This document shows, one piece after another, positions 7,184 to 37,669 of a stretch of 64,000 nt of DNA (the stretch's first letter is position 1; every line of letters begins with the position of its first letter). Origin of the DNA: Blepharisma stoltei ATCC 30299 (lineage: Eukaryota > Protista > Ciliophora); contig CBFDEM010000005.1 of the NCBI GenBank assembly GCA_965603825.1, forward strand, positions 682,001-746,000. Direction: 5' to 3'. A model generated the notes under the pieces. The model ran no database searches. It worked only from the letters and a program-made list of their open reading frames with translations, and was not told the origin of the DNA. The position numbers were made by a program, and so were the translations under genes.

Positions 7184-7483
7184 TTTATTTTGTGATAAAT
7201 TTGAGACTACCTTGATAAGCCAGGGAGAGATATTGCAAAAGTCTTTATTCTAAGTTAATATTTAAATATAAGTGCATATTTTTATGTCAAAACGATTATC
7301 ATTTAGTATGCTAATATTGTCAATAATATTTATATCAATTTTAAATAAGATGCATGAAAGCATTGGCTTTCTGTTGATTAAGAATTTAAAAATAAATTTT
7401 GACGATGAATTTATAAATTAATCATCCATGCATAATAAAAAGAAATGACTTTTTACTAATAATTCTCATAATTTGATTCAAAT

Positions 7484-9110
7484 ATGTAAGATTTTATGCA
7501 GGTCAAATGGAAAAGACTCTCAATTCGAATCGCCCGGGAGGTCTCGCTCAATAGGCCACTATATACTTGGGAAAACTATAGGTCAAGGCACATTTGGAAA
7601 AGTTAAAATTGGCACTCATATCTTAACGGGAGAAAAAGTGGCAATTAAAATTCTTGAAAAAGCAAAAATTTCAGATAAAAATGATGTGGAGAGGGTTGCT
7701 AGAGAAATTCATATATTAAAGCTGCTAAGACATCCTAATATTGTGCAACTTTATGAAATTATTGAAACTCCGAAACTTTTATATCTGATCATGGAATTTG
7801 CAAGCGGCGGAGAGCTTTTCGATTTCATAGTTGCACACAATAGGGTCGAAGAATATGAAGCTTGTGTTATTTTTCAACAAATCCTAGCTGGAGTTGAGTA
7901 TCTTCATAAAATAAATATCGTTCATCGCGATTTAAAGCCAGAGAACTTACTTCTTGATAAAAAAAATCAAATAAAACTAGCCGATTTTGGGCTATCAAAT
8001 ACTTACAAGCCTGGACAGCTATTAAAAACAGCTTGTGGAAGCCCCTGCTATGCTGCCCCAGAAATGATAGCTGGGAAACGATATAAAGGCTCTCAAGTAG
8101 ACATATGGAGCTGCGGGGTAATTTTATATACGTTAGTATGCGGTTATTTGCCTTTTGATGATAAAAATACGACTCAGCTCTATAAAAAAATTTTGGGCGG
8201 AGACTACAAATGCCCAAATTTTATTTCTGAACCTGTGAAAGATCTGATTGGGAAAATTTTAAACGTTGACCCTGAAAACCGTTATAATATTGATCAGGTA
8301 AAACAGCATCCTTGATATAGAATGGCTCGACAAGAAATTCCTATTGGAATTATTATTGGGTTTGATAGAATTTTAATAGATGATGAAATGCTAGAAAGTC
8401 TTAATCAATTTGGCTTCAACATAAGCCAAGCCAGAAAATACATTGAAAGTAACAAGCATAATAACTTGACAACCACTTACTATTTATTGCTAAATAAGCA
8501 TGGGGAAGGAAGAATCAAGCCTCTCCAGCCTAAAATTCCTATCCCAAGAATCTCTATCGAAAAAGTTCCTGGAAACATTACAGAGCGTTCCAGAACGCCA
8601 AATAGCGATCGAAACTCAATTGAACTAAAACGTCCAAATACAACAAGACCCTCTATAGGCGCCCACAATAGAAAAGTTTCTCAAATCACAGAAACCCGTA
8701 AAGTGACAACACCAAAAGAAACTTTCAAATCAGTTTCCCCTACTTCACATAGGCCAAATGCATCACCAAAGCCATCAATTTACAGCAGACTCCAAAATAA
8801 AGAAAATCCTCCAAAAATAAGGCCAGTCATAAAAGTCCATAAAGGTCCTTTTAATGTCAGCTGCACAAGTGTAAAATCTTATGATGACATTGTAAAAATT
8901 GTTGGCAATGCGCTAGAAATAAATGATGTAGCCTTTAAACAAGGAAATTTAGGGAATTTTGAGTGTGAAAAGAGCAAGGTTAAGTTTGGGGTTGAAATTA
9001 ATAGTGTTGAAGGATATTCAAAACTATTAATTGTGAAATTTGTGAAAATTAATAATGGGGTGGGTTATGAGAGTGTATGTGAAGAAATTTTGAGCTCAAT
9101 GAATTTGTAG
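7484..9110 (+). CDS. AMPK/SNF1/MARK-family kinase with UBA and KA1-like tail; join(7484..7485,7502..9110), 536 aa
   Basis: GQGTFGKV, VAIK, HRDLKPEN, DFG and LKTACGSPCYAAPE. TGA 8313 supplies the W of HPW and fuses ORF 8322..9110. The start codon is restored by a 16-nt intron. Confidence 0.9.
7486..7501 (+). other. 16-nt spliceosomal intron (GTAAGATTTTATGCAG) splitting the kinase start codon
   Basis: GT..AG with A at -6. Removal gives AT|G TCA AAT GGA in frame; there is no other in-frame ATG before the kinase domain. Confidence 0.75.
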
Positions 9111-15025: not shown

Positions 15026-15754
15026 TTATAAAGAGTAAATATTTGAGAGATGAAGCTAGATTTGCTGTATGGCATTGATTTAAGGAAGAATTTAGATATT
15101 CATAGTATGAGGTGAATGAAAGAAATAAAAATTAAAAATTATAGATATAAAAACAATGAATAAATTATATTTCCCTTGATCTATCTATGGGTCTGTTAAT
15201 TGGATAGCTCAAATAGGAATAGCATTGGCCTATTGGAGATTTAAATTATAAGAATTACTCATATGAGATAAAGAGATCATTTATTGCTCTGCCTGGTCTG
15301 AATCCATTTTTTACTGTTTCATTTGCCTGTCACTAGTAACTGTCACTAGTTTTCATAATTGTTTAATAATCAATGCTTTATCTTTGCTGAAGCGACATGC
15401 ATAAATATTAAAATAGATCCCTTCCAATTTATTTAGTCAATAGATGCAGAGCTGGCTCTAACCGGTATCATCAATAATCATTTAACTCATAAGCACGTTT
15501 TTGGTTTATGAGCTTATAATAGCTAATTGTTCTTAAGCTACAATTTTCGATCCCTGAATCATTCTCAAGCATATATAATTATCATAAGTATTATAATGCA
15601 ATTTCTTCTTTAATTACAATTTCCTTTTACCTTATTTTCATTCCACCTCCAATTTCCAGCTGAAAAATCTTTATTTTTCATTGTCTTCAAATCCAGTCAG
15701 AGCTGACCCAAAAGAACATATAAATTAGCCAATTCTGTTGTGGCCTTATAAAAT

Positions 15755-18700
15755 ATGGACCAACAATTAATTGATCTTCTCGTCGAAGTCCCAGGGAAAG
15801 GACCATTAATCATTGCAGCTCCATCTACTTTAGACGAGCTACTCTTATTGATTTCTCAATACTCTTCATATCAAAAAAACGATATTTCTATCCTTTACAA
15901 GCGAAAAGAAACTTGGTTTGGAATCATAGACCAAGCCACTTATTCATCAATTCTCAAACGTGCACAATCAGCAAGCCAATCTGAGATCGAAATTAAAGTA
16001 GAAATCAGTGCTTCTGCTCCTCAAAATCAATTAGAAGAGCTAAAAACTGAAGTCAGCTGGGAAATCATGTCAAATGTCCCTGCTCCAGCAGTATCAGTAC
16101 CTGAAACTTTGAATGAGTCTGAAGCTACTCCGCTTATTCAATATCGCTACTTAAATAGTGCTGACCCAGAAACATTTAATCAGCTAAGAATCCCAGCCTT
16201 AGATATCACGCTAGAAGACCTATCAAATTTAGTTTTACAGCTTGAAAACAAGCCTCCTGCAGATTTTATTTGTGCATTTTACAGCGAAGATGGATGTCCT
16301 TTGTATGGAAGCTTGTCTCAGATGCCGTTTATTAAATGCAATGAAGTAATACCTGGATCCTGCAAACTTAATGTGATGATTGTGCCCAATTTTGATGTAA
16401 AATCTCTCCCTTCAAAAGATCCTAATGAAGGTTCTGACACTGTGATTTTCCAATCCAGCGCTGATTTGACTAAAACTTTTACTGTAAAAGTGAACTTATC
16501 GACTACCACAATCCAGGACCTAAAGCAAAAGCTTTATTCCTTAACCTTAATCCCTACTTTTGAGGCTAAATTCAAATCCAATGATATTTTCCTAACAAAT
16601 GATACCTTTACACTATCATCTTACAATATAAATCAAAATCAGACTATTATTTATTGGAAAGAAAGCTATGATTACACTACAAGGACTTATAAACCTATTC
16701 TAAAACGCACTGTTGAGCAAACCATTGATGGAATTAAGCTATTTCATTCCTTTTTATATTGCTTTTCTAATGTGATTGGAACTTGTGAAAAGCCTACCCG
16801 TGAAGCCATTTTAGGCATGATAAGGCAAGCGTCTCAAAATAACACCCCACTTTTGCATGCTTTATATGAGCTTAGTATAGGCAAAAATATGAGTTTATTA
16901 GATTCAATTGCTTTAGAAGAAGGCTTTATTTTCATTATTAGCCATTTAGTAAAAGAATTAAATGCAACTGACAAGGTATCAAACGATAAACTATTTGAAA
17001 ATTGTTTAGAAGTGATAGGATTATTATGCGAAATCGGCTGTAAACCAACTGAAGAGTACTCAAGAGATGAGACTTATTTAGAATATGATACAATCTGCCC
17101 ATTATCACTGGTAGAACTAAAAAATCCTGTATGCTTAAGAAAAATTGATGGGACATATGCCTATTATGAGCATGAAGCTGTGCTGAAAAGAGCCCAGGAA
17201 CATACAGAAATTGTTGGTGTCGGACTAGTTAAAGAGTCACAAATAAAAATTTCCAAAGATTTTGTGTACCCTGTAAAGCGAGCTATTTATAACGAAAAAG
17301 AATCTATAATTCTCTGAACTGGGACCTTTGATCGCAGCAACACTTTTCCTAACATCATAAGAGCTTCTTTCCCACAAGGCCTTGTATGGGATCAATTACT
17401 CCAAATTAAGAAAAATTACAAGCTTTCCAAAATTCACTCAGCTTTATCCTTAAAAAGTTCAGAAACCCGCCATTGCATAACCCTTGACAAAAATAAAGAA
17501 ATTGTGGTAAACAGAGGATTATCACCTAAAGAGCCAAATACTGTAGAATTAATGAACATTTTGACAAGAGATGTTTCGAAATATGATATTGACGATATGG
17601 CAAGCATTATAGAAAGGATAAGCAGAGATGACCCTGCAATCGAAACAATTACAAGACCTCCAGACGAAACTATTATTGTGATTTTTGATAAAAGTGGATC
17701 AATGGGAACCACATTTGGACCTGAAGGGGAATATACCAGACTTGATGCCACAAAACAGTTTTTCGAATCTTTTGCTGATAGGACCGTTGGTTATAATCTT
17801 AACCATGTTATGTCTTTATTCCTTTTCAGCACAACTATAGATAGAGCTTGTGGATTTACTGAAAATATTTCGACATTTACAGCAGTTGCCCATCAGTCAA
17901 AACATTCAGGCGGGACTAAACTGTGGGACGCTATATATGAAGCAATCCAGTCACTTGTAGAATTTAAGGTGAAATACCCTAACACTCATCTGAGGATTTT
18001 ATGTTTAAGTGATGGAGAAGATACATCGTCAACCCATGGCTATTTACAAGTAGCACAACAGCTGATTGCAAATAATGTGATTATGGACAGTGTTGTTGTT
18101 GGCGACCTTTCTCAGAATTTGAAAGCTATTTCTTATGCATCTGGTGGCTATGTCTTTTTACCAGCAACTTTGCAAGATGGAATCAAGCTGTTTGAAAGTG
18201 AGACGTTGCTGTCAGTGAGAAATAGAAAATCTATAGTAAAATGTATGGTAAATACTGATAATGATTTAGAGCCTTTAAGGAGAAAAGAGATTAATAACCA
18301 GCAGCCTGCGATGGCAGCTCCAGCTGAAATTTCTCAAGGTGCTGTGACTGCTGAACAAGCTTTGAAAAAAATGGCTGCTTCTCCTCCTGCACCACAAGGT
18401 AAAAGTGGCTCTGCAGGGTGCGTTAAAAGAATAATGAAAGAGCTTCAAAACATTTCTACCAACCCTCATGAAAATATTGTGGTTCTCCCAAATGATAATG
18501 ATATAATGTTTTGGAATTTATATATTGAAGGGCCTGAGCAGACTCCTTATGAAGGAGGCCTTTTCCAAGCCTTTGCAAGATTTCCTAATGATTACCCCTT
18601 CAAGCCTCCTACTATTAAATTTGTGACTCCTATATACCACTGCAACATAAACTCTACAGGATCTATCTGCCACTCTATTTTGAATCAGTTTTATTCACCT

Positions 18701-19117
18701 GCTGTTACTGTAAGACATATGCTGGACTGTATATATGGGCTGCTTATGACTCCAGAGCCTATGGATCCTCTTGATGCTTATATTGCGGCTGAAATTAAAG
18801 ATGATTATGAACTATATATATCAAAATGCAGAGAACATATACAGTTGCATGCTAGCAAATCCTTTGAAGAGCTAACTGGAATGAAAAAGCCTGTAAGTGG
18901 AACAGTCATCCCTGAAGAGTTTTTAGACCCGATTTCGAAAAGGATTATGAGTGACCCTGTTATAATTCATGGGAAAACATATGAAAGAAGTGAAATTGAA
19001 AGGGTGATTGACCAGACTGGAAAAGATCCTGATGGCAATGAAGCAAATAAGGCTGATTTAGTCCAAAATGCTGGACTCTTGCAAAGAATTGATGAATTTA
19101 AACAAGCCCATCCTTAA
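15755..19117 (+). CDS. 1120-aa multidomain ubiquitination protein: PB1-like, Ubl-like, U-box-like, vWA, UBC (E2), U-box
   Basis: ORFs 15755..17317 and 17504..19117 share a frame with only TGA 17315 between them. vWA: DKSGS, GGTKLWDAI, LSDGED. E2: KRIMKEL, GPEQTPYEGG, YPFKPP, YHCNIN..G.IC. U-box: PEEFLDPISKRIMSDPV..GKTYER. Confidence 0.8.
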
Positions 19118-19504
19118 GAATTAAATTAGATTAACAACAATTTGATACCTTGACTTATTATATTCTTTCTCTTTTGCTATTAATTTTTTTATCTTTAAAC
19201 AGTAAACAATATTAATAATAAAGATCTTTAAACGTCTTAATAGCTCTTTGGCATGATATAACCCGATAAAATCATTAGAAAACAACTTTTAATCCAGATT
19301 TTAAGTGTATGTCTCTACCCTTCAAAGTAAAATTCTCTTCTAAGATGCTTCAAATCATTATCGAAATCATCAGAAATCATAATATATTTAAGTAAGTTGA
19401 ATACTTTAGACAAAAAAAGATATAAATGCCCATATTTATACTTAACCATCATTAATTTTTCATTATATTAGACTTTTTATAATAAAATCGCAATTAATTG
19501 ATTT

Positions 19505-20062
19505 TTATCTAGTTTTATTTCTTTTAAGATTTGTCAAATACTTCAAAGTTGCGTCAATATTTGTCATATTTTTAGAACTCACACTATAGCATGCGACAGT
19601 TCTACCTGTAATAGCATTTAAACTTAATGCTGAAATTAGCTCTTCTTCATTAAGTGCTCCATCTAAATCATTCTTATTCCCAAGCACTAATAGTGAAATT
19701 CCTTGTAGCGAAGGCCACGATAACAATTTTTGCAATTGAGCTTTAGCAACTTCAAGATTACCGAAGTCAGCTGAATCCACAACAAAAATAATGCAATCTA
19801 CATTTCTGCAGTATTTTTCCCAGCTTTCCCGAAATTTAGGCTGCCCACCGAGATCCCAGAGTCTCAGTTCGACACCTCCTTTTTTAATTCTTCGATGGTT
19901 AAATCCAATTGTCGGTATTGTGTCTTCATCAAATTCAGAAGTTGCAAGGACATTTACAAAGGTTGTTTTTCCAGCATTTTGAAGGCCGACGATTGAAAGC
20001 TCCATTTGTTGGTTCCAAAACATTGAGCGAAGCCAGTTTAGGAATCGTGACCAGAGTCCCAT
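19505..20062 (-). CDS. ARL8: ADP-ribosylation factor-like GTPase 8
   Basis: WLRSMFW.Q.MELSIVGLQNAGKTT, DTIPTIGFN, WDLGGQPKFR..WE.YCR, GNKNDL and CYSVS. Confidence 0.93.
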   Translation of the reverse strand: MGLWSRFLNWLRSMFWNQQMELSIVGLQNAGKTTFVNVLATSEFDEDTIPTIGFNHRRIKKGGVELRLWDLGGQPKFRESWEKYCRNVDCIIFVVDSADFGNLEVAKAQLQKLLSWPSLQGISLLVLGNKNDLDGALNEEELISALSLNAITGRTVACYSVSSKNMTNIDATLKYLTNLKRNKTR

Positions 20063-29708: not shown

Positions 29709-32700
29709 CTAGTTGAAGATTAGGAAGAAGGCCATAAATAGACCAACTGCTGAAGCCCCATCTATTTCATAAGTAAGGATTGTATAGATTGGCAAGGTGC
29801 TGATAGATGGAGTTGTTGTTGTCGCATCAATGCAAGTTGGCCACAAAGGATAGTCATTGCAGGCAGTAAAGCTGCAGTTATAAGGAGTCCCTACTCTCAA
29901 CCCATCGACAAACATCGTAATGTTTTTATTAGCAGTGCTGTTTGAGCAGCTGGATGGAACAATATCACTGTACCCATCAAGCCCAGATATAATCTGCCAT
30001 GCATAAGTTGTCAGTGACTGATATGTCTTTCTAGAACAGCTAACACACATTATACCACTTTGAGTTGGGGTTCCAATAAATGTCACATTGGTCTGCCCAA
30101 TAGCTGCTAGAACAGGCTGGCGTATCCATGAAGGGTAGGTCGTAGAAGAACTAGTTGCTGCTGCATTTGAAAGTGTAGGTGTAGCTGATGTCAATGCTGT
30201 TAAGTCACTAGTTACTTGGCTAACGTCTAAGTTTGCTATAATAGCTAATGGGGAGTATTTAATATTGCTTCTATCATAAAGAACTTCATAAGTAAATGTC
30301 GTTGAAGATGCAAGCATTCTCATTCTTCCAGTTGATGGATTCGCAACCTCTTGATTGGTGAGCCAGCCTGGATTGATTCCCATATTTTTCGCAATTGCAT
30401 TACGAATATCATCTCCTTTGCTTGAAGCAACAGAAGCTGAGAAAGAAACTGTATAAGTATAGACTGATGGCAGGCTAGGGGTTGTCAAGCTTATAGACTG
30501 GCTTTGCATAGCACCAGAATACAGTCTGTTATCAGCATAGACAAAGACATTATAAGTAGTATCAGCATGAAGCCAGTCAAAATCTAGTGTTAAACTTCCA
30601 CTGGCATACAAAACTTCCATATTGTACCAGTTCAAATTGCAATGATCTCTATGTAGCCTTCTGAAAAATGCATAGTAATCTGAATCAAGCTCAGGATTTG
30701 GGTCAATCTCAGTATGTAAATAATCATAAGATCTTTGCTCATATAGCGATAAAGTTGAGTTACTAGGATCTACCAAATCTTTGCATGAATCCTTCACCAT
30801 TCTATAAGATGGCGTAGAGCCTCCAGTGCAAGCTAACCACCAATAGATAACCACGTTTTGTGTGGATGAAATAGTGACTTTGGCATGGTTTCCGTCTATT
30901 ATGCTACTAGCAAGGGTAACTGTTGTGGCGGTATAAGCTGAGGTAGAAGCTGCATTCACTGTTAGACTAATAGTGCTTGGGGCTGTATATGAAGCTTCGT
31001 CAGTCCCTGACAAGTCAAATTTGAGCACAGGAGCTTTCTGAGAGGTAGCATAAGTACTGTTAACAAAAAGTTCAAAGTATTTAACATCTTCGTTAGGCCC
31101 AAACATTAAATAAGTAGGAGAAATGAAGATACCAGAAGGAGCGTTGTTGAAGCTAAGCCAGACTGTAATATCAGTAGCTGGGGCTGCACCTAAAGTAACA
31201 GAAATAGGGATACTTGTGTATCCTACGACTAAATTAGGGATTTGTCCTACAGTGATAGCGACATTTTCAGTTTCAGGCTCACATACTTCTACAAGAATAG
31301 AATATGGAGAGCCATAGAGATCGCTGGAGACTCCTGGCTGGACAGTTTCTTCAGTGCTCCAATCAATGTAATAAAGTCCACTTGTGGCATTGCTTAAAGC
31401 TGCAATTCTGAATGTCATGGAGTCGTACATTTGCAAAATTGTCCAGTCGTGGAAGGTTGAGGAGTATTCGAAAATGTAGTCATCTGGGTAGTTAGGGTTG
31501 CTATGAGGGGTTAATATAAGTTTCTTTGATCTCATAGGCCAGTTTCCTATTGAAATTGTAATGTCGTCACTTTGAGTTCCTGGAAGAAGTCTGATTCTGT
31601 TGTCAGATGTTTGGCCGACACTTTTAGGAGAATAGCTATTGACTTCAATTGGGATGTAGCTTCTGTTATAGCCAATATAAGCTGAGTTAAGGACTCCATA
31701 GCTTTTTCCAAGGACAAGGTTGGCTGTATCATTGTAAATTTTAATTTCAAATCTGCTTGACCAGTAGTCATGCCATGAGAAAGTAGAGTTGTCTTCAATA
31801 TCCCAATAGTCAAAATTCTTTGCGTGTCTTTCAAATCCCCATTGAGGGTTATATGCCTCAATTTCTAAGCTAAGCATATCAGCAGAATTAAAGTTGAATG
31901 TTTTTGTTGTTTGTACACTGAGCTCAAATTTATCTTTTTCTACATTACAAGAAGTTCCGCTAAACCAGGATAAAGCAGTTGATGAGCTTGTATTTACCTT
32001 GCCAGATTGGTCATAATAAACTGAAGAGCATGATGTCGTATCGTTCATTAGTAAAGTGTTGTCGTATTGACTTGGAAGGCCAATTTCAAATCTCAAAGTA
32101 TTATTGACATCCCCTGCATAATAAAACTCAAGGGTATAATTAGCAATTTCTAAGAGTTCTACTTGATCGGTAGAAATTGACTTGAAAATCACACTGCTTG
32201 GGGCCAGATCAGTTGTAGTGACTGTTCCGAATTCTTCCTCATAAGCTTTTACAGTTCCTGCAGAATTCAGATGGTACACTTCAAAGTTTCCAGTTTGCCC
32301 TTTGGCTGGATTCATTACTTCGCTAATCGTAATGTCAATAGTAGTGCTAGCAGAAACAGTTTTATCAATCCCAGAAACGACTACATACCAATGGTCTGCA
32401 GTACAAGAAATAGAACCTAATGATGAAGAGCTACATGGGATATAATATGAATAAGGCTCACAGTCAGTCATATAGTTATCTGCTTTACCTATATACGGGT
32501 CATAATATGACCTAGGGAAAATTATCCAGAAATAATCATTTGCATCTACTTGTGCAGAGGTGAATCTGAAGGTGTATGAAGAATATTCTGCTGCGTTTGT
32601 AATGCTCATTGTTAAAGAGTTGCTGGTGGCAGGGACTAAAGTGCCGGTTACTGCTGAGTTGACAGTAAAGGAAGCTGCTGTTGTATCTGAAGTGATTGTA

Positions 32701-35700
32701 ACCCCGTTCCAAGCTGAAATCACTTTAAAGCCCCCAGATGTAGTGCCTGCTGATGAAGGAAGATTTAAAGCATTATCAAGATAGACCTGAACTGTAGTGG
32801 AGGACAAAAGATCTTGAGACAATGTAAGAATAATTTCGCTTGAGCCACTAGAAACGGTGCAAGATGAATATACAATATTTGACCAGCAGCTATTCTTTAT
32901 ATCGCCAGAGGCAGAATATTGCCAAGTGTCAAAAGCTGATATTGAAATGGTTCCTCCTGCAGGCACCCTTTTAGGTAATGAGAAACTGAGAAAAAAATCA
33001 ACTCCAGGAATTCCAGCTTGATTTGGATATGAGGCAGCTTTTCAGTTTGTTGTAGTTCCTGCATCTGCAGCAGCTGTTAAACTGCATTTAGCTGTAAAAG
33101 TAGATAAAGAATCAATGTAATAGTTAGAGTCAGCATCTTGAGTGTAAATTGAGGTTATATAATAGATTGGGTCTGTGCCTGATGAAGGAGGAAATACGTG
33201 GTTTGCAGTTATTGTTATTGATGTAGATGAGCTCACTGCTGCAAATTGTGATATAACCAAAGTGGTTGAGCTAGAGGAATATTGCTTTGACAATTTTTGA
33301 GATGAGCTTTGATCTGAAAGTCCTGATATTCCGAATGATACATATGTGAAATCCCAGGATTCGGCAAAAACAATAGTGATTGAGCCTCCAGCAGATATTG
33401 CATTAACAGTGGAAAAACTAATTGTTATTGTTGTGTCAACTGAGTCTGGTCCTTTTAATGAAACTGTTGTAGGTGAGAATGTTGGCTCTTTAAGAGTAGC
33501 AACTGCCAAATCATAGTTTGTTAAAGTGTCTCTATAGGTGCATTGAGTGGCTATAGTTGAACTAGCTATGAATATATTAACCGGAATGTTGGTTAGAGTA
33601 CTTGAATTTTTCACCCTACTAGGAGGCGCTATGTTGTCAATTGTTAAAGCAGTACTAGTTAATAGATCAGCAAACTTAAAAGTATCAGTAAATTGTGTAA
33701 TAATAAACGCACCTTTAAAGCCTATTGTTGGAGATGAAACGCGGTAAATAGGGCTAGCTGCAACTCCGCCTAATGAAATTGAAGTTGAAGAACTGGTAGT
33801 AAATCCTTCTGGAAATCCAATGCCAAAATAGTCATTTTTTGAAGGTAAATCCTTATTACTGCCGAGAATTAGATTACCTACGAGGCTTCCACTTTGATTA
33901 ATCGTAAGAGTAGCAGCAGTCCCTGATGCAGTATTAAAGGAATACTTTGGTTCAGAGAATTTGGTTATAGTTTCTGTATAGCCATAAAGTTGGAACTGAA
34001 TACCTGGATATGACGTAGACGTGTAATAAAAAACAGTAGAGTAAGTTCCATAGCCTGCATTTCCAACTGCAATATAAGTGGTTATAGTTGAGCTTGTGGT
34101 TGTTGGACCAAGTCCTGTTAATGTGATAATAGTATCACTACTTTTAGATGTCAATACAGCAGAGGCCGATGATGCAGTTGAAGTCACTGGAATCGAAGCG
34201 CCAGTGGCTAAGCCAGTTCCCAAATCTCCACCTCCTGATACTGTTATGTCAATGTAATAGTTGCCAGAACCAAAATCAAAAGTCTGAGTATCTGATTTGA
34301 ATACACTAACTAGAGGAATCCCTACAGTTGTGCCAGAGCAAAGTGGAACTGTAGAAATAGTATTTCTATTACTGAATGTTTTTGTTGTAACTGTGAATAC
34401 ATATGAATCAATATCATATAATGGTCCTCCTGTTTGAGTCGTGGCTTTAGCCCAACATTCATAAAATGTCACTTTATTTGACGCAACAAATGGAAAAGCT
34501 ACCTGCTCAGTTGTAATGGTAGTAGAGTATGTAGTGTAAAACCCTAACAAATAGTAGCTGCTTGAAGCTAAATCAGTGTTAAGTAGCTCAACTGAAATTT
34601 GATTAGATGAAGGAGTTATTGTATTCTCAACAGTTATCGTTGAATAGCTGCCGCTGGTGGTTAAGCTTGTTGTTGATTCTTGGACTTTTGTTGCTGAACT
34701 ACTAATATAAGAGCTAGTAAATTGAACTCCAGTAGTTACTAATGGCAAGTTGATAGATATAGTTGTAGTTTTATCCCAATCGTTAGCTGGTTTGAAAACG
34801 AACCAAAGAGTTCTACCTGTATATTCTCCACCTCCCTGATACCCTGTAGAAAGTGTAATATCAGTAGGATAATCAGTTGGGGTTAATTTGTAATAAGCAT
34901 GATGTTTAAATTTGGAGAATCTTGTTTTACTAGTACTCCCAAGTGCCCAGGAAATAGGACTGCTGCTAGTTTGGTCAACGGTGTAATATCCATCATATGT
35001 TGTAATTGAATTAACACTAGGAGATGAGCTAAATTTACTCAGTACTATTAAAGATATTGAGCCGGCTGGCTGCGCTTTTGTAAATGAAATCACTACTTTT
35101 GATGTTGCGTCAGAAGCTGATGATATTGAGCAGGAACTACCTGAAATTGAAACATAGCACATTGCATTAGAAGCTCCTGTAGCGTCATCTATATCTACCC
35201 ACCAATTTTGACCAATATTAACATTTGTGAACTCAATGGAAACTCGTCCTACTGTAGAAGAGATATCATGACTGGTAACAAAAGTCAAATTTGTAAAAAG
35301 CGTCATTCCACTCAAAGTATCAGCTTGGGCAATAGTGCTCATAGGACTCCAAGAGGATGCAGTAATCCCTCCTGCATATGTTGCAACTGGGCCAGTGACT
35401 GATGCATAATTAGCTAATAAAGTGTTTGTTCCCCATCTCCAAATATAAACACTCCATGTAAAAGCACTTTTATCTAAAACTACTCCAGGCAAAGTAAAAG
35501 TAGACACACTGATCTTCAATTTCAGCGAAGTCGTTGTTTCTGTTATTAAGACATCTTGAGAGATGCCATAAATAAATACGTGTCCAGAACTATCAGTTTG
35601 ACATGGGAGATTATTGCTCCCATCTGGTCCAATTAGTAAATTACTGTTATCACTAACAGTTACTGAGCTGCAGGTAGCATTGGAGACCTTCCAATTTGAA

Positions 35701-36284
35701 TCCGTATTGATTTCTATTAAGTCATGCTTCCATAAGCTGGTTGTAAGAGTAAATGTAAAATAAATTCCATCAGTGGAACCTACGATTGGTTTTTCAGCGC
35801 CACTAACCGTTGCTATAGAAAGAGTAGATGAATTTATGGTTGATGCTGAGGTAGCGATGCACCCAAAGAAGTAGTTTGCATCGACTATTTGCCCAGTTGA
35901 ACTTGCCCTTGTCACGATGGAAAATGGTCCAAAAACCCCTTGAGAGCTCGGAAGGGTAATTTCGCCTGTGGCTACTGACATATCAGTTTGAGCACTGATA
36001 CCTCCGGAAGGGGAAATGGTTACAGTCTGGCCACTGCTAATTGTGATGGACGAAGGAAAGGTTATTTGAACAACCCCGCTTGAAATGGAAGTTGAAGGTC
36101 TAAAATGGAAGGTAAAAACTACACCAGTTGATCCTTGATTTGTTTGACTCAGCTCTATAGCATTGTTGCTCCACGTGTCTTGCCACCAAGTTATCTTGCC
36201 AGGGTCGAGTGAACTATCTTTTGAGCCTATCGTTAAACTTGATGCTGTCCACAGGACACCAAAGAGACATAGAAGCCATTTCAT
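29709..36284 (-). CDS. Giant Ser/Thr-rich secreted/surface protein (~2191 aa), signal peptide and probable GPI-anchor signal
   Basis: Two ~1080-aa ORFs in one frame joined by TGA 33042. MKWLLCLFGVLWTASS start, beta-rich repeats, hydrophobic end GASAVGLFMAFFLIFN. Confidence 0.85.
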
Positions 36285-37669
36285 TTTATATTAGTGGATT
36301 TAAATCAAGAAAGATTTAAGAAAGGAATAAATAGTTATTTTAATTATAAATTATATCTGCTGAATAAAATTTTAATCCCCTTATATTAAGTTTAGGACAT
36401 GAAGCTGTAGCCTGAAAAAAGATCTTATAATTAGATTATCTTGTCTAAATTTCAGGCGTTTATAAAGGAATTACAATGGATTTTTTTCGATTTCACTATT
36501 TAAGATATATAAAAAATTAATTAAATTAAGCTGGATATTAAGAAACGGCAGTTGAATCGAAGATATAAAATTTTATTGAATTAAATAAAGATAACGAGAA
36601 AATTTTAAATTCCAACCAGAAAGAAGATTAATTTGAATTAGGCTTGAAATAAAATATGAGAAGAAATATGGAAGACTATAAAGGAAAAATTTTTAAATGA
36701 AATATAAAATTAGTTGGAATTAAGTAAGCTTTATTGGTATGTAATAATCTAATAATATGACTTTCTTGCTATTAAAGATTTTAGTTCTCTCTTTAAAATT
36801 AATACACTTACTTATTTTTTTGTTTATTACGATTTTTCCTATTTTAATAATTTGAATTCAAAATATTTTAATTAAATTAAATTAAAAAGAACTTTAAACA
36901 ATAAAACAATAATTTAATCAAATTAACGCTTAATTATTAGTCTACTGTTGAAATGATAGCTCTATGCTTATACACAAAAGAAATAGTTTGAAAATGATTT
37001 GAATTTGAAGAGATGCAGATATAATTTAATTTAAATTAAGTAGATTTATTTTTATTAATTTAATTTTAGGCATTAAAGAATATTTAAACACTAATTATCT
37101 TATCATTTTTAATTTATCCAATGCCACGATAATAAAATAAAAATGTGGAATTTCTAATTGCATAGGATAGATGGATAAAATAGAACTTAAACTATGGCAT
37201 TAAATATGTTTGAGATCAAGCTAAAATAAAGGGCTGCATCTACTGAGCGATTTATTTGATTTCTCATTTATTTTAATTCTATTCTAATTTTTTATCACAT
37301 TTTTTAAATAATTATTTTTCTGATATATCATTTATTTTAAAACTATGTTCAATAATCATAAAACATAATAAATTCCATATTAATTTAGCCACATTGTACT
37401 CCATTCTTCTATTCCTATTTTATTTAGAATATCCATGGATAAACTAACAAAACTTTTAAAATATTTGCATCTTTAGGCCAATATAGAGAAATAGATTAAA
37501 TATTTTAGAAATAAAAATTATTGATCTGAGCAGCAAGCTCGATATTTTTCTATAATAGCCACAAAGCATTAATACCACTTAAATAATCCAAATAAACAAA
37601 ATCTTTAGTTTATTTTAATCATAAGCATAAATTGCCCCTACAATCTAATAAAGATAATAATCAATTAAG

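What the first reader, a model, noticed from the sequence alone, without database searches (positions are those of the whole stretch)
15755..19117. Putative self-contained E2-E3 ubiquitin ligase: PB1/Ubl/U-box-like/vWA/UBC/U-box in one 1120-aa chain
Seen: one frame, hidden by a single TGA at 17315. It encodes a PB1-like N-terminus, one or two beta-grasp/Ubl segments (TTIQDLKQKL..TLSSYNI, ~16440-16660), a U-box-like CPLSLVELKNPV..YE (~17090-17180), a vWA domain with intact MIDAS (DKSGS..T..SDGED, from ~17665), a UBC domain with HCN in place of HPN (18638-18646) and catalytic Cys at 18668, and a C-terminal U-box (~18905-19110). Established: U-boxes activate E2~Ub that is normally supplied in trans, and E2/E3 hybrids such as UBE2O and BIRC6 are rare and lack this architecture. 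Inference: an E1-only-dependent ligase with vWA as metal-dependent substrate receptor and PB1 for oligomerisation. I cannot confirm from the sequence alone that the architecture is undescribed.
Basis: partly seen in the sequence, partly recalled or inferred. Interest (0 to 1): 0.85.

Follow-up and report, generated by a model that had tools for sequence, protein, structure and literature searches.

The report
Single-chain E2 plus U-box ligase gene
This ciliate gene encodes one 1,120-residue protein joining a ubiquitin-carrying enzyme (E2) to two U-box ligase domains, a metal-dependent vWA binding domain and ubiquitin-like domains; the family runs from ciliates to sponges and fish, and I found no paper on it.

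Summary
Window 15755-19117 (+) is one reading frame with a single TGA at 17315-17317.

The TGA is a tryptophan codon, not a break:
- The genome is Blepharisma stoltei, published code UGA=Trp.
- Two of the four paralogs in this genome have TGG at that column.
- 48 of 56 homologs have Trp there.
- The public gene model is the same 1,120-residue protein.

Domains, from profiles and a confident AlphaFold model (pLDDT 88.5): three beta-grasp/Ubl-like domains, a helical domain, a cryptic middle U-box, an alpha/beta domain, a vWA domain with a complete MIDAS, a UBE2D-like UBC domain with its catalytic Cys, and a C-terminal U-box. "PB1" is not supported beyond a beta-grasp pattern.

The architecture is not unique. 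At least 150 sequence clusters carry vWA-UBC, many with the whole domain order. Named members come from ciliates, Chromera, a choanoflagellate, a glass sponge, rotifers and salmonid/esocid fish. All are unnamed or "uncharacterized".

The family has its own active-site signature: HPN becomes HCN, and Cys-Leu becomes Cys-His.

The idea of a self-contained E2-E3 ligase is plausible but untested. Cis docking of a U-box on the fused E2 could not be shown, and no RNA data could be obtained.

This scan had not noted the family elsewhere.

The parts
15755..19117 (+). Complete coding sequence: 1,120 codons plus a TAA stop, no intron detected. Identical to the database protein P0165.
17315..17317 (+). 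In-frame TGA, read as Trp521. It lies in a beta-strand of the alpha/beta domain.
   Evidence: At this column paralogs L016 and L018 have TGG, and ours and L017 have TGA. Trp occurs in 48 of 56 homologs. A kinase in the same window has TGA at the Trp of its HP-W motif. UGA=Trp is published for B. stoltei (PMC9942806).
15773..16006 (+). N1: N-terminal beta-grasp-like domain (aa 7-84).
   Evidence: AF2 secondary structure and pLDDT around 90. Pfam PB1 only E 0.19. No significant match to solved structures. A homologous module is fused to a WD40 propeller elsewhere in the genome.
16133..16387 (+). N2: second beta-grasp/Ubl-like domain (aa 127-211).
   Evidence: AF2. The family Ubl HMM cross-hits the N2 region in homologs.
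16436..16660 (+). Internal ubiquitin-like domain (aa 228-302) with no C-terminal Gly-Gly.
   Evidence: Pfam ubiquitin 26.3 bits against a cutoff of 25.4 when scanned alone. Stronger in homologs, E 8e-10.
16724..17038 (+). Conserved helical domain (aa 324-428) with no recognised fold.
17075..17290 (+). Middle, cryptic U-box/RING-fold domain (aa 441-512).
   Evidence: Profile A2 against solved structures: LubX U-box 1, E 8.6e-10. VIA-align Z 8.4 to the CHIP U-box and 7.5 to Ufd2. Foldseek TM 0.6-0.68.
17303..17620 (+). Alpha/beta domain (aa 517-622). It packs with the helical domain and the middle U-box into one unit, and it spans the TGA codon.
   Evidence: The sub-model of aa 306-636 has pLDDT 91 and pTM 0.87.
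17666..18244 (+). vWA domain (aa 638-830) with a complete MIDAS: D645, S647, S649, T721, D753.
   Evidence: Pfam. Invariant columns. Best structural match is the TFIIH p44 vWA, Z 22.2.
18413..18850 (+). UBC (E2) core (aa 887-1032), UBE2D-like.
   Evidence: Pfam E 2e-39. 44-46% identity to UBC-2/UBE2D. Rmsd 0.8-1.4 A and Z 23.
18638..18646 (+). His962-Cys963-Asn964, the family's variant of the HPN motif.
   Evidence: Alignment to UbcH5 H75-P76-N77. Cys at this site in 152 of 197 family sequences.
18668..18673 (+). Catalytic Cys972, followed by the family-specific His973.
   Evidence: Aligned to UbcH5 C85-L86. Cys in 192 of 197 and His in 165 of 197 family sequences.
18902..19108 (+). C-terminal U-box (aa 1050-1118).
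   Evidence: Pfam U-box E 2e-12. Matches to solved LubX and PUB U-boxes.

Best explanation
SHOWN. Window 15755-19117 is one intact Blepharisma stoltei gene. Its single TGA encodes Trp521.

The 1,120-residue product has nine ordered domains:
- three N-terminal beta-grasp/Ubl-like domains;
- a compact helical / U-box / alpha-beta module;
- a vWA domain with an intact metal site (MIDAS);
- a UBE2D-like E2 core with its catalytic Cys;
- a C-terminal U-box.

It belongs to a large, eukaryote-wide family with no characterised member that I could find. The constant core of the family is vWA-UBC, and in most complete proteins a U-box is also present. The family carries its own active-site signature: H-C-N, then Cys-His.

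INFERRED, in order.
1. E1 charges Cys972 with ubiquitin. The helix-1 residues that UBE2D uses for E1 and E3 contact (R5 and K8 equivalents) are kept.
2. One of the protein's own U-boxes, in cis or between subunits of an oligomer, binds the UBE2D-type E3 surface. This copy keeps that surface (F62, S94-P95-A96 equivalents). Binding stimulates discharge of the thioester.
3. The vWA MIDAS holds the substrate or a partner through an acidic side chain.
4. The N-terminal beta-grasp domains mediate self-association or ubiquitin-receptor contacts. Other family members carry SAM or Par3-N/PB1-type oligomerisation domains in that position.

The net proposal is an E2-E3 enzyme in one chain that would need only E1, ubiquitin and ATP.
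For: One chain:
- Paralog codons TGG/TGA at the same alignment column.
- Trp in 48 of 56 homologs.
- A kinase in this window has TGA at the Trp of its HP-W motif.
- PMC9942806 and bioRxiv 10.1101/2023.10.09.561518 report UGA=Trp.
- The ORF of paralog L018, translated with TGA=Trp, is identical to an NCBI B. stoltei protein.
- The AF2 module aa 306-636 spans the codon with pTM 0.87.

Domains: Pfam, a profile against solved structures, and AF2 with fold searches.

Family:
- 460 representative proteins at E < 1e-30, and the top 150 all carry vWA-UBC.
- Domain order conserved in sponge, fish, choanoflagellate and ciliate proteins.
- An ESM Atlas cluster of 458 members with UQ_con, VWA and U-box.

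Catalytic competence:
- Across 197 family sequences, C972 is kept in 192, H962 and N964 in 193, and D1004 (D117 equivalent) in 178.
- The F62, SPA, R5 and K8 equivalents are kept in this copy.

Oligomerisation modules at the N-terminus of relatives: SAM in Oopsacas, Par3_HAL_N_term in P0036.
Against: - No biochemical data exist for any member.
- Cis docking is not shown. Only the E2 part of the model superposes on the UbcH5B-MIB1 RING3 fusion 8v0d: 149 residues by VIA-align, and 209 columns at rmsd 15.6 A by Foldseek. Model coordinates and PAE were not available to me.
- Across the family the canonical E3-binding residues are poorly conserved: the F62 equivalent is Phe in 43 of 197 sequences, and the A96 equivalent is Asp in 95.
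- The UbcH5 L104 position, which contacts donor ubiquitin in the closed state, is Asp here and in most members.
- Paralog L016 has lost the C-terminal U-box.
- About 30 of the family proteins collected have their only U-box upstream of the vWA.
Confidence: 0.55

Rival explanations
1. The TGA is a real stop, or lies in an intron or an assembly error. The locus would then make two separate proteins: about 520 aa of Ubl/U-box-like sequence and about 540-600 aa of vWA-UBC-U-box.
For: Under the standard code the frame breaks at 17315. In vitro, B. japonicum eRF1 recognises UGA weakly (10.1101/2023.10.09.561518).
Against: - TGG in two paralogs at this column, and Trp in 48 of 56 homologs.
- All four paralogs and distant homologs keep both halves in one chain.
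- There is no ATG directly after the TGA; the next start-type codon is a GTG at 17504, inside the conserved domain.
- The codon lies about 600 codons upstream of the stop, far outside the zone of UGA depletion before real stops.
- No GT..AG interval whose length is a multiple of three spans it.
- There is no 5-residue indel relative to the paralogs.
- Selenocysteine is excluded by the same Trp conservation.
Confidence: 0.02
2. It is a two-E2 or E4-like machine. The U-boxes recruit a separate free UBE2D-type E2, and the fused HCN-type E2 does a different step (priming or chain extension) or is served by another E3. The protein is therefore not self-sufficient.
For: - There are two U-boxes but only one E2.
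- The family-wide E3-binding surface of the fused E2 is variable.
- The model does not place the C-terminal U-box at the RING site seen in 8v0d.
- Blepharisma has many free E2s, with more than 60 UBC matches in the genome.
Against: This copy keeps the UBE2D-type F62 and SPA surface. A U-box is linked to vWA-UBC repeatedly in independent domain orders, which argues for a functional E2-U-box coupling.
Confidence: 0.25
3. The fused E2 has altered chemistry or an altered modifier. The H-C-N / C-H pairing around the catalytic Cys could form a redox (disulfide) or metal switch, or a Cys relay. Alternatively the E2 may carry a ubiquitin-like protein other than ubiquitin.
For: - Cys at the HPN proline position in 152 of 197 family sequences.
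- His after the catalytic Cys in 165 of 197.
- Ser at the D87 position in 132 of 197.
- Asp at the L104 position in 84 of 197.
(All.)
- Earlier notes of this scan describe clustered private Ubl systems in this genome (untested here).
Against: The signature is also found in sponge, fish and choanoflagellate members, so it is not tied to Blepharisma's own Ubl clusters. The overall fold and the remaining catalytic residues are canonical UBE2D. I could not measure distances in the model.
Confidence: 0.15
4. It is a non-catalytic scaffold: the UBC and U-box domains serve only as binding modules.
For: The HPN motif is altered and family members have no known activity.
Against: The catalytic Cys, His and Asn are nearly invariant across 197 sequences. 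Conservation of that kind is typical of active enzymes.
Confidence: 0.04

Closest known systems
UBE2D (UbcH5 / Ubc4/5) E2 enzymes
   Same: The UBC core is 44-46% identical and superposes at 0.8-1.4 A. The catalytic Cys, the His and Asn of HPN, and the R5, K8, F62, S94-P95-A96 and D117 equivalents are kept.
   Different: The core is embedded in a 1,120-residue chain. P76 becomes Cys, L86 becomes His, D87 becomes Ser and L104 becomes Asp, and these changes are family-wide.
UBE2O and BIRC6 (E2/E3 hybrid enzymes)
   Same: Large proteins in which a UBC domain is joined to substrate-binding regions. PMC12818219 describes them as the only two E2s known to ubiquitinate substrates without an E3.
   Different: To my knowledge UBE2O and BIRC6 contain no RING or U-box and no vWA. 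No sequence similarity outside the UBC core was found. Here the E2 is fused to bona fide E3 (U-box) domains.
U-box E3 ligases (CHIP, UFD2/E4B, plant PUBs, Legionella LubX)
   Same: Both U-boxes have the U-box fold and sequence pattern. Like LubX, the protein has two U-boxes.
   Different: Known U-box ligases take their E2~Ub in trans, which is established knowledge. Here an E2 is in the same chain.
U-box + VWA protein 'Mb_UBOXa' (Monosiga, Naegleria, Trimastix, Spironucleus; Marin 2010, PMC3087547)
   Same: An ancient protist U-box ligase with a vWA domain. It may correspond to the U-box / alpha-beta / vWA part of this protein.
   Different: The paper describes no UBC domain. I could not fetch its sequence, so homology is untested.
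vWA-plus-RING proteins: plant RGLG1/2 and TFIIH p44/Ssl1
   Same: An intracellular vWA domain joined to a RING-type E3 domain. The p44 vWA is the best structural match of this vWA (Z 22.2, 14% identity). From my own knowledge, RGLG ligases work with UBC13-type E2s.
   Different: Those proteins have no fused E2, their RING binds zinc, and the sequence relation here is only at fold level.
Engineered E2-RING fusions used in structural biology (such as UbcH5B-MIB1 RING3 8v0d and RING1B-UbcH5c 4r8p)
   Same: An E2 and a RING-type domain in one chain.
   Different: Those fusions are artificial; this one is natural and conserved.

Membership tests
UBC / E2 superfamily (PF00179) | UBC fold | tested here: met
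   Pfam E 2e-39, covering 139 of 140 profile positions. Rmsd 0.8-1.4 A to UBE2D structures, Z about 23.
UBC / E2 superfamily (PF00179) | Catalytic cysteine | tested here: met
   Cys972 aligns with UbcH5 Cys85. Cys in 192 of 197 family sequences.
UBC / E2 superfamily (PF00179) | HPN motif | tested here: inconclusive
   His962 and Asn964 are present and nearly invariant. The Pro is replaced by Cys963 here and in 152 of 197 family sequences. The functional effect is unknown.
UBC / E2 superfamily (PF00179) | E1-dependent thioester formation | not testable with these tools
   Needs biochemistry.
U-box E3 (PF04564), C-terminal domain | U-box profile and fold | tested here: met
   47-48 bits against a cutoff of 21.4. 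AF2 pLDDT about 90 with strand-strand-helix then a C-terminal helix, consistent with a U-box.
U-box E3 (PF04564), middle domain aa 441-512 | U-box profile and fold | tested here: met
   No single-sequence Pfam hit. The family profile hits solved U-boxes at E 8.6e-10. Z 8.4 to CHIP and 7.5 to Ufd2. Homologs reach zf-Nse at 30.1 bits against a cutoff of 27.
U-box E3 | Stimulates E2~Ub discharge | not testable with these tools
   Needs an assay. The structural proxy against 8v0d was not met but is a weak test.
vWA domain with MIDAS (PF00092 / PF13519) | vWA fold plus the DxSxS...T...D metal site | tested here: met
   VWA 29.8-31.6 bits against a cutoff of 23.8. D645, S647, S649 and D753 invariant and T721 nearly so. 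Z 22 to the p44 vWA.
Ubiquitin family (PF00240), aa 226-303 | Ubiquitin profile above the Pfam cutoff | tested here: met
   26.3 bits against a cutoff of 25.4 when scanned alone, but 21-22 bits in the whole protein. Homologs score up to E 5e-10. There is no terminal Gly-Gly, so it is an integral Ubl and not a conjugatable modifier.
PB1 domain (PF00564), aa 1-86 | PB1 profile | tested here: not met
   12.1 bits against a cutoff of 23.6, E 0.19. A profile of 16 homologs against solved structures gave nothing significant. Only the beta-grasp secondary structure fits.
E2/E3 hybrids of the UBE2O or BIRC6 type | Homology outside the UBC core | tested here: not met
   Residues 1-640 find no solved relative apart from a marginal ubiquitin-variant hit.
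E2/E3 hybrids of the UBE2O or BIRC6 type | Substrate ubiquitination without a separate E3 | not testable with these tools
   Needs biochemistry.

The most novel reading that the evidence does not exclude
This would be a natural E2-E3 enzyme conserved from ciliates to fish, in which a U-box in the same chain or in a neighbouring subunit activates the fused E2~ubiquitin, so that E1 is the only other enzyme needed. The family-specific Cys next to the catalytic centre (H-C-N ... C-H) would act as a redox, metal or relay switch. The vWA MIDAS would capture substrates, or the protein's own Ubl domains in the way midasin's MIDAS binds Ubl domains. It would be a third, mechanistically distinct class of E2/E3 hybrid beside UBE2O and BIRC6.
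Probability: 0.25. Interest if true: 0.8.

Novelty: new variant of a known kind. Interest (0 to 1): 0.6.

Why it matters
A 2025 paper held in the library (PMC12818219) states that UBE2O and BIRC6 are the only two E2s known to modify substrates without an E3, and to my knowledge neither contains a RING or U-box.

This family is a natural, conserved fusion of a UBE2D-like E2 with U-box domains and a metal-dependent binding domain. It is present in animals (sponge, rotifers, fish) as well as protists.

It offers three things:
- a ready-made system for asking how E2-E3 pairing works when the two are tethered;
- a test of what the strictly conserved HPN proline is for;
- a possible minimal ubiquitination machine.

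It also shows that apparent stops in Blepharisma sequence should be read as Trp before a gene is called broken.

Tried and rejected
1. Intron across the TGA. No GT..AG interval with a length that is a multiple of three spans 17315, and there is no 5-residue indel against the paralogs. Rejected.

2. Selenocysteine at the TGA. The aligned residue is Trp, and TGG in paralogs. Rejected.

I did not try another route.

4. A profile search of the 5.8-billion-protein set with alignment A1 was swamped by the word prefilter and returned only 5 hits. It added nothing to the taxonomic picture.

5. PMC2701696, my guess at the id for 'Anatomy of the E2 ligase fold', is not held, so I could not check whether that survey mentions the family.

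6. Eight literature searches found no description of the family. The library lacks most subscription journals, so this is weak negative evidence.

7. The N1 profile against solved structures gave only marginal O-GlcNAcase and CIDE-N hits, E about 0.02. PB1 is not supported.

8. An OTU-protease reading of the helical plus alpha/beta module. Similarity to OTUB1 and SnOTU is weak (Z 5.4-5.5). The candidate Cys position (aa 363) is Cys in only 33 of 56 homologs and Asn here, and there is no conserved His. Rejected as an active protease.

9. The cis-docking test via fused E2-RING chains is inconclusive. No model coordinates or PAE were available.
Full report
THE OBSERVATION

Translating window 15605-19180 in the frame of the ATG at 15755 gives 1,120 sense codons, one TGA at 17315-17317, and a TAA stop at 19115-19117. 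The window is 29-41% GC and gene-dense. Reading TGA as sense joins several other long frames in the window.

IS THE TGA A BREAK?

No. Six lines of evidence agree.

1. A protein kinase gene in the same window (7449-9107) has its only internal TGA (8313-8315) exactly at the Trp of the HP-W motif that ends the kinase domain. The Pfam Pkinase match stops at profile position 261 of 263, immediately before it.

2. The genome holds four paralogs of this gene. Both halves are contiguous and in frame in every one.

3. In their alignment, the column of our TGA is TGA in two copies and TGG in the other two. Other conserved Trp columns, including the E2 'FW' tryptophan, also alternate between TGA and TGG.

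4. Among 56 homologs from other organisms this position is Trp in 48.

5. The ORF of paralog L018, translated with TGA=Trp, is identical to an NCBI protein of Blepharisma stoltei. Our own translation is identical to database protein P0165, which has Trp at 521. The assembly is 41.46 Mb in 64 contigs, and the window's 29-41% GC is in line with the AT-rich (66%) genome published for that species. That paper reports UGA=Trp and 15-16 bp introns (PMC9942806). A later preprint calls UGA unambiguously Trp in this genus.

6. In the AlphaFold models the codon sits in a beta-strand of a compact module (aa 306-636, pTM 0.87) that spans the junction.

I saw no intron.

DOMAINS

Pfam on the full protein gives UQ_con (E 2e-39), U-box (E 2e-12) and VWA (29.8 bits, cutoff 23.8), plus a marginal ubiquitin hit that passes its cutoff only when the domain is scanned alone.

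With a 56-sequence alignment, AlphaFold2 models the whole chain at mean pLDDT 88.5 and pTM 0.63. Only residues 87-122 are disordered. The ordered units are:

- N1, beta-grasp-like: aa 7-84
- N2, beta-grasp/Ubl-like: aa 127-211
- Ubl: aa 228-302
- helical domain: aa 324-428
- middle U-box: aa 441-512
- alpha/beta domain: aa 517-622
- vWA: aa 638-830
- UBC: aa 887-1032
- C-terminal U-box: aa 1050-1118

A profile of 37 homologous segments hits solved U-boxes and SP-RINGs (LubX U-box 1, E 8.6e-10; plant PUBs; NSE2; Prp19; CHIP). The modelled domain matches the CHIP, Ufd2 and E4B U-boxes at Z 7.5-8.4.

'PB1' is not supported.

The helical and alpha/beta domains have no convincing structural relative. 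A weak OTU-like similarity (Z about 5.5) lacks conserved catalytic residues.

THE E2 CORE

It is closest to UBE2D, at 44-46% identity and 0.8-1.4 A rmsd. Mapping onto UbcH5 numbering:

- Kept: Cys85, His75, Asn77, Asp117, and the E3/E1-contact residues Arg5, Lys8, Phe62 and Ser94-Pro95-Ala96.
- Changed: Pro76 to Cys, Leu86 to His, Asp87 to Ser, Leu104 to Asp.

Across 197 family sequences:

- The catalytic Cys is kept in 192.
- Cys at the Pro76 position occurs in 152.
- His after the catalytic Cys occurs in 165.
- The Phe62 equivalent is Phe in only 43.
- The Ala96 equivalent is Asp in 95.

The active-site signature therefore defines the family, while the canonical E3-binding surface does not.

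THE vWA DOMAIN

The MIDAS residues DxSxS and D753 are invariant and T721 nearly so. The best structural match is the vWA of TFIIH p44, a protein that also carries a RING-type domain.

THE FAMILY

An exhaustive HMMER search with the C-terminal 599 residues found 460 cluster representatives at E < 1e-30. All of the best 150 align across vWA and UBC contiguously, and many continue through the U-box.

Named members:

- Blepharisma, Paramecium and Metopus (ciliates)
- Chromera velia
- Salpingoeca macrocollata (a choanoflagellate)
- Oopsacas minuta (a glass sponge)
- Oncorhynchus, Umbra and Dallia (salmonid and esocid fish)

The ESM Atlas adds a cluster commonest in rotifers and a 458-member cluster, commonest in chordates, whose members carry UQ_con, VWA and U-box.

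With family HMMs I see three main forms:

- The full order, N-terminal module / Ubl / helical / U-box / alpha-beta / vWA / UBC / U-box, in sponge, fish, choanoflagellate and ciliate proteins.
- A form whose only U-box lies upstream of the vWA.
- A shorter vWA-UBC form, some of which are fragments.

The N-terminal module varies. It is SAM in the sponge and Par3-N/PB1-like in others. Blepharisma paralog L016 has lost the C-terminal U-box.

LITERATURE

Eight full-text searches found no description of a vWA-UBC-U-box protein.

Marin (2010, PMC3087547) described an ancient protist U-box + VWA ligase, Mb_UBOXa, without a UBC domain. It may be the unfused relative of the U-box / vWA part.

PMC12818219 states that UBE2O and BIRC6 are the only two E2s known to act without an E3.

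The library omits most subscription journals, and one survey of E2 folds could not be read.

MECHANISM

Shown: one chain; an E2 core that looks catalytically competent; two U-box folds; an intact MIDAS.

Inferred: E1 charges Cys972. One of the protein's own U-boxes, in cis through the 18-residue linker or in trans within an oligomer, activates the thioester. The vWA supplies substrate or partner binding.

Against a simple cis model:

- Only the E2 part of the full-length model superposes on the same-order UbcH5B-MIB1 RING fusion 8v0d. This is a weak test, because I do not know whether that crystal has cis or trans contacts, and I had no coordinates or PAE.
- The C-terminal U-box is dispensable in parts of the family.

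The main rival is a two-E2 or E4-like mode, in which the U-boxes recruit a free E2. The conserved H-C-N / C-H pair suggests a regulatory or relay cysteine, but this is speculation.

VERDICT

This is a normal, intact member of a large, conserved family with no published description that I could find, which amounts to a natural E2-U-box fusion. It is a new variant of the E2/E3-hybrid idea, visible in databases but apparently unstudied. Earlier notes of this scan did not report the family.

Noticed in passing
window 7449-9107 (+), TGA at 8313-8315: A protein kinase gene whose kinase domain ends at an HP-[TGA] motif. It continues for about 264 residues with no Pfam match. It served here as an in-window check that TGA=Trp.
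   Followed up: partly
window 29709-36290 (-), TGA at 33042-33044: A frame of about 2,190 codons with a single TGA and 40 TGG codons. Neither half (1,080 and 1,110 aa) has any Pfam match at E <= 0.01. It is a large gene of unknown function.
   Followed up: partly
L019:2052-3563 (+) = G000:C47, about 533551-535062: The N1 beta-grasp-like module of this protein (first ~110 residues, 33% identity, E 1e-9) also opens a 503-codon gene whose remainder is a WD40 propeller. N1 is therefore a mobile module in this genome.
   Followed up: partly
L016:1781-4975 (-) = G000:C53, about 1194280-1197474: The closest paralog (71% identity, 1,064 aa) has a C-terminal deletion that removes the U-box but keeps everything else, including the middle U-box and the catalytic Cys. 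It is a natural 'U-box-less' control.
   Followed up: partly
window 16724-17620 (aa 324-622): The helical plus alpha/beta module, with the U-box inserted between its two halves, has weak structural similarity to OTU deubiquitinases (OTUB1 and SnOTU, Z 5.4-5.5). Position 363, just before a helix, is Cys in 33 of 56 homologs but Asn here. There is no conserved His, so it is probably not a protease.
   Followed up: partly
ESM Atlas rows (not in the window): The shape search listed other clusters that carry a UBC domain together with another Pfam family: F-box + UBC (57 members, commonest in Arthropoda) and trypsin-like peptidase + UBC (109 members). I did not examine their domain architecture.
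   Followed up: no
window 19505-20062 (-): The 185-aa ORF just downstream, convergent with this gene, reads like a small Arf/Arl-type GTPase (GxxGxGKT and DxGGQ motifs visible in the translation). It was not tested with a profile.
   Followed up: no
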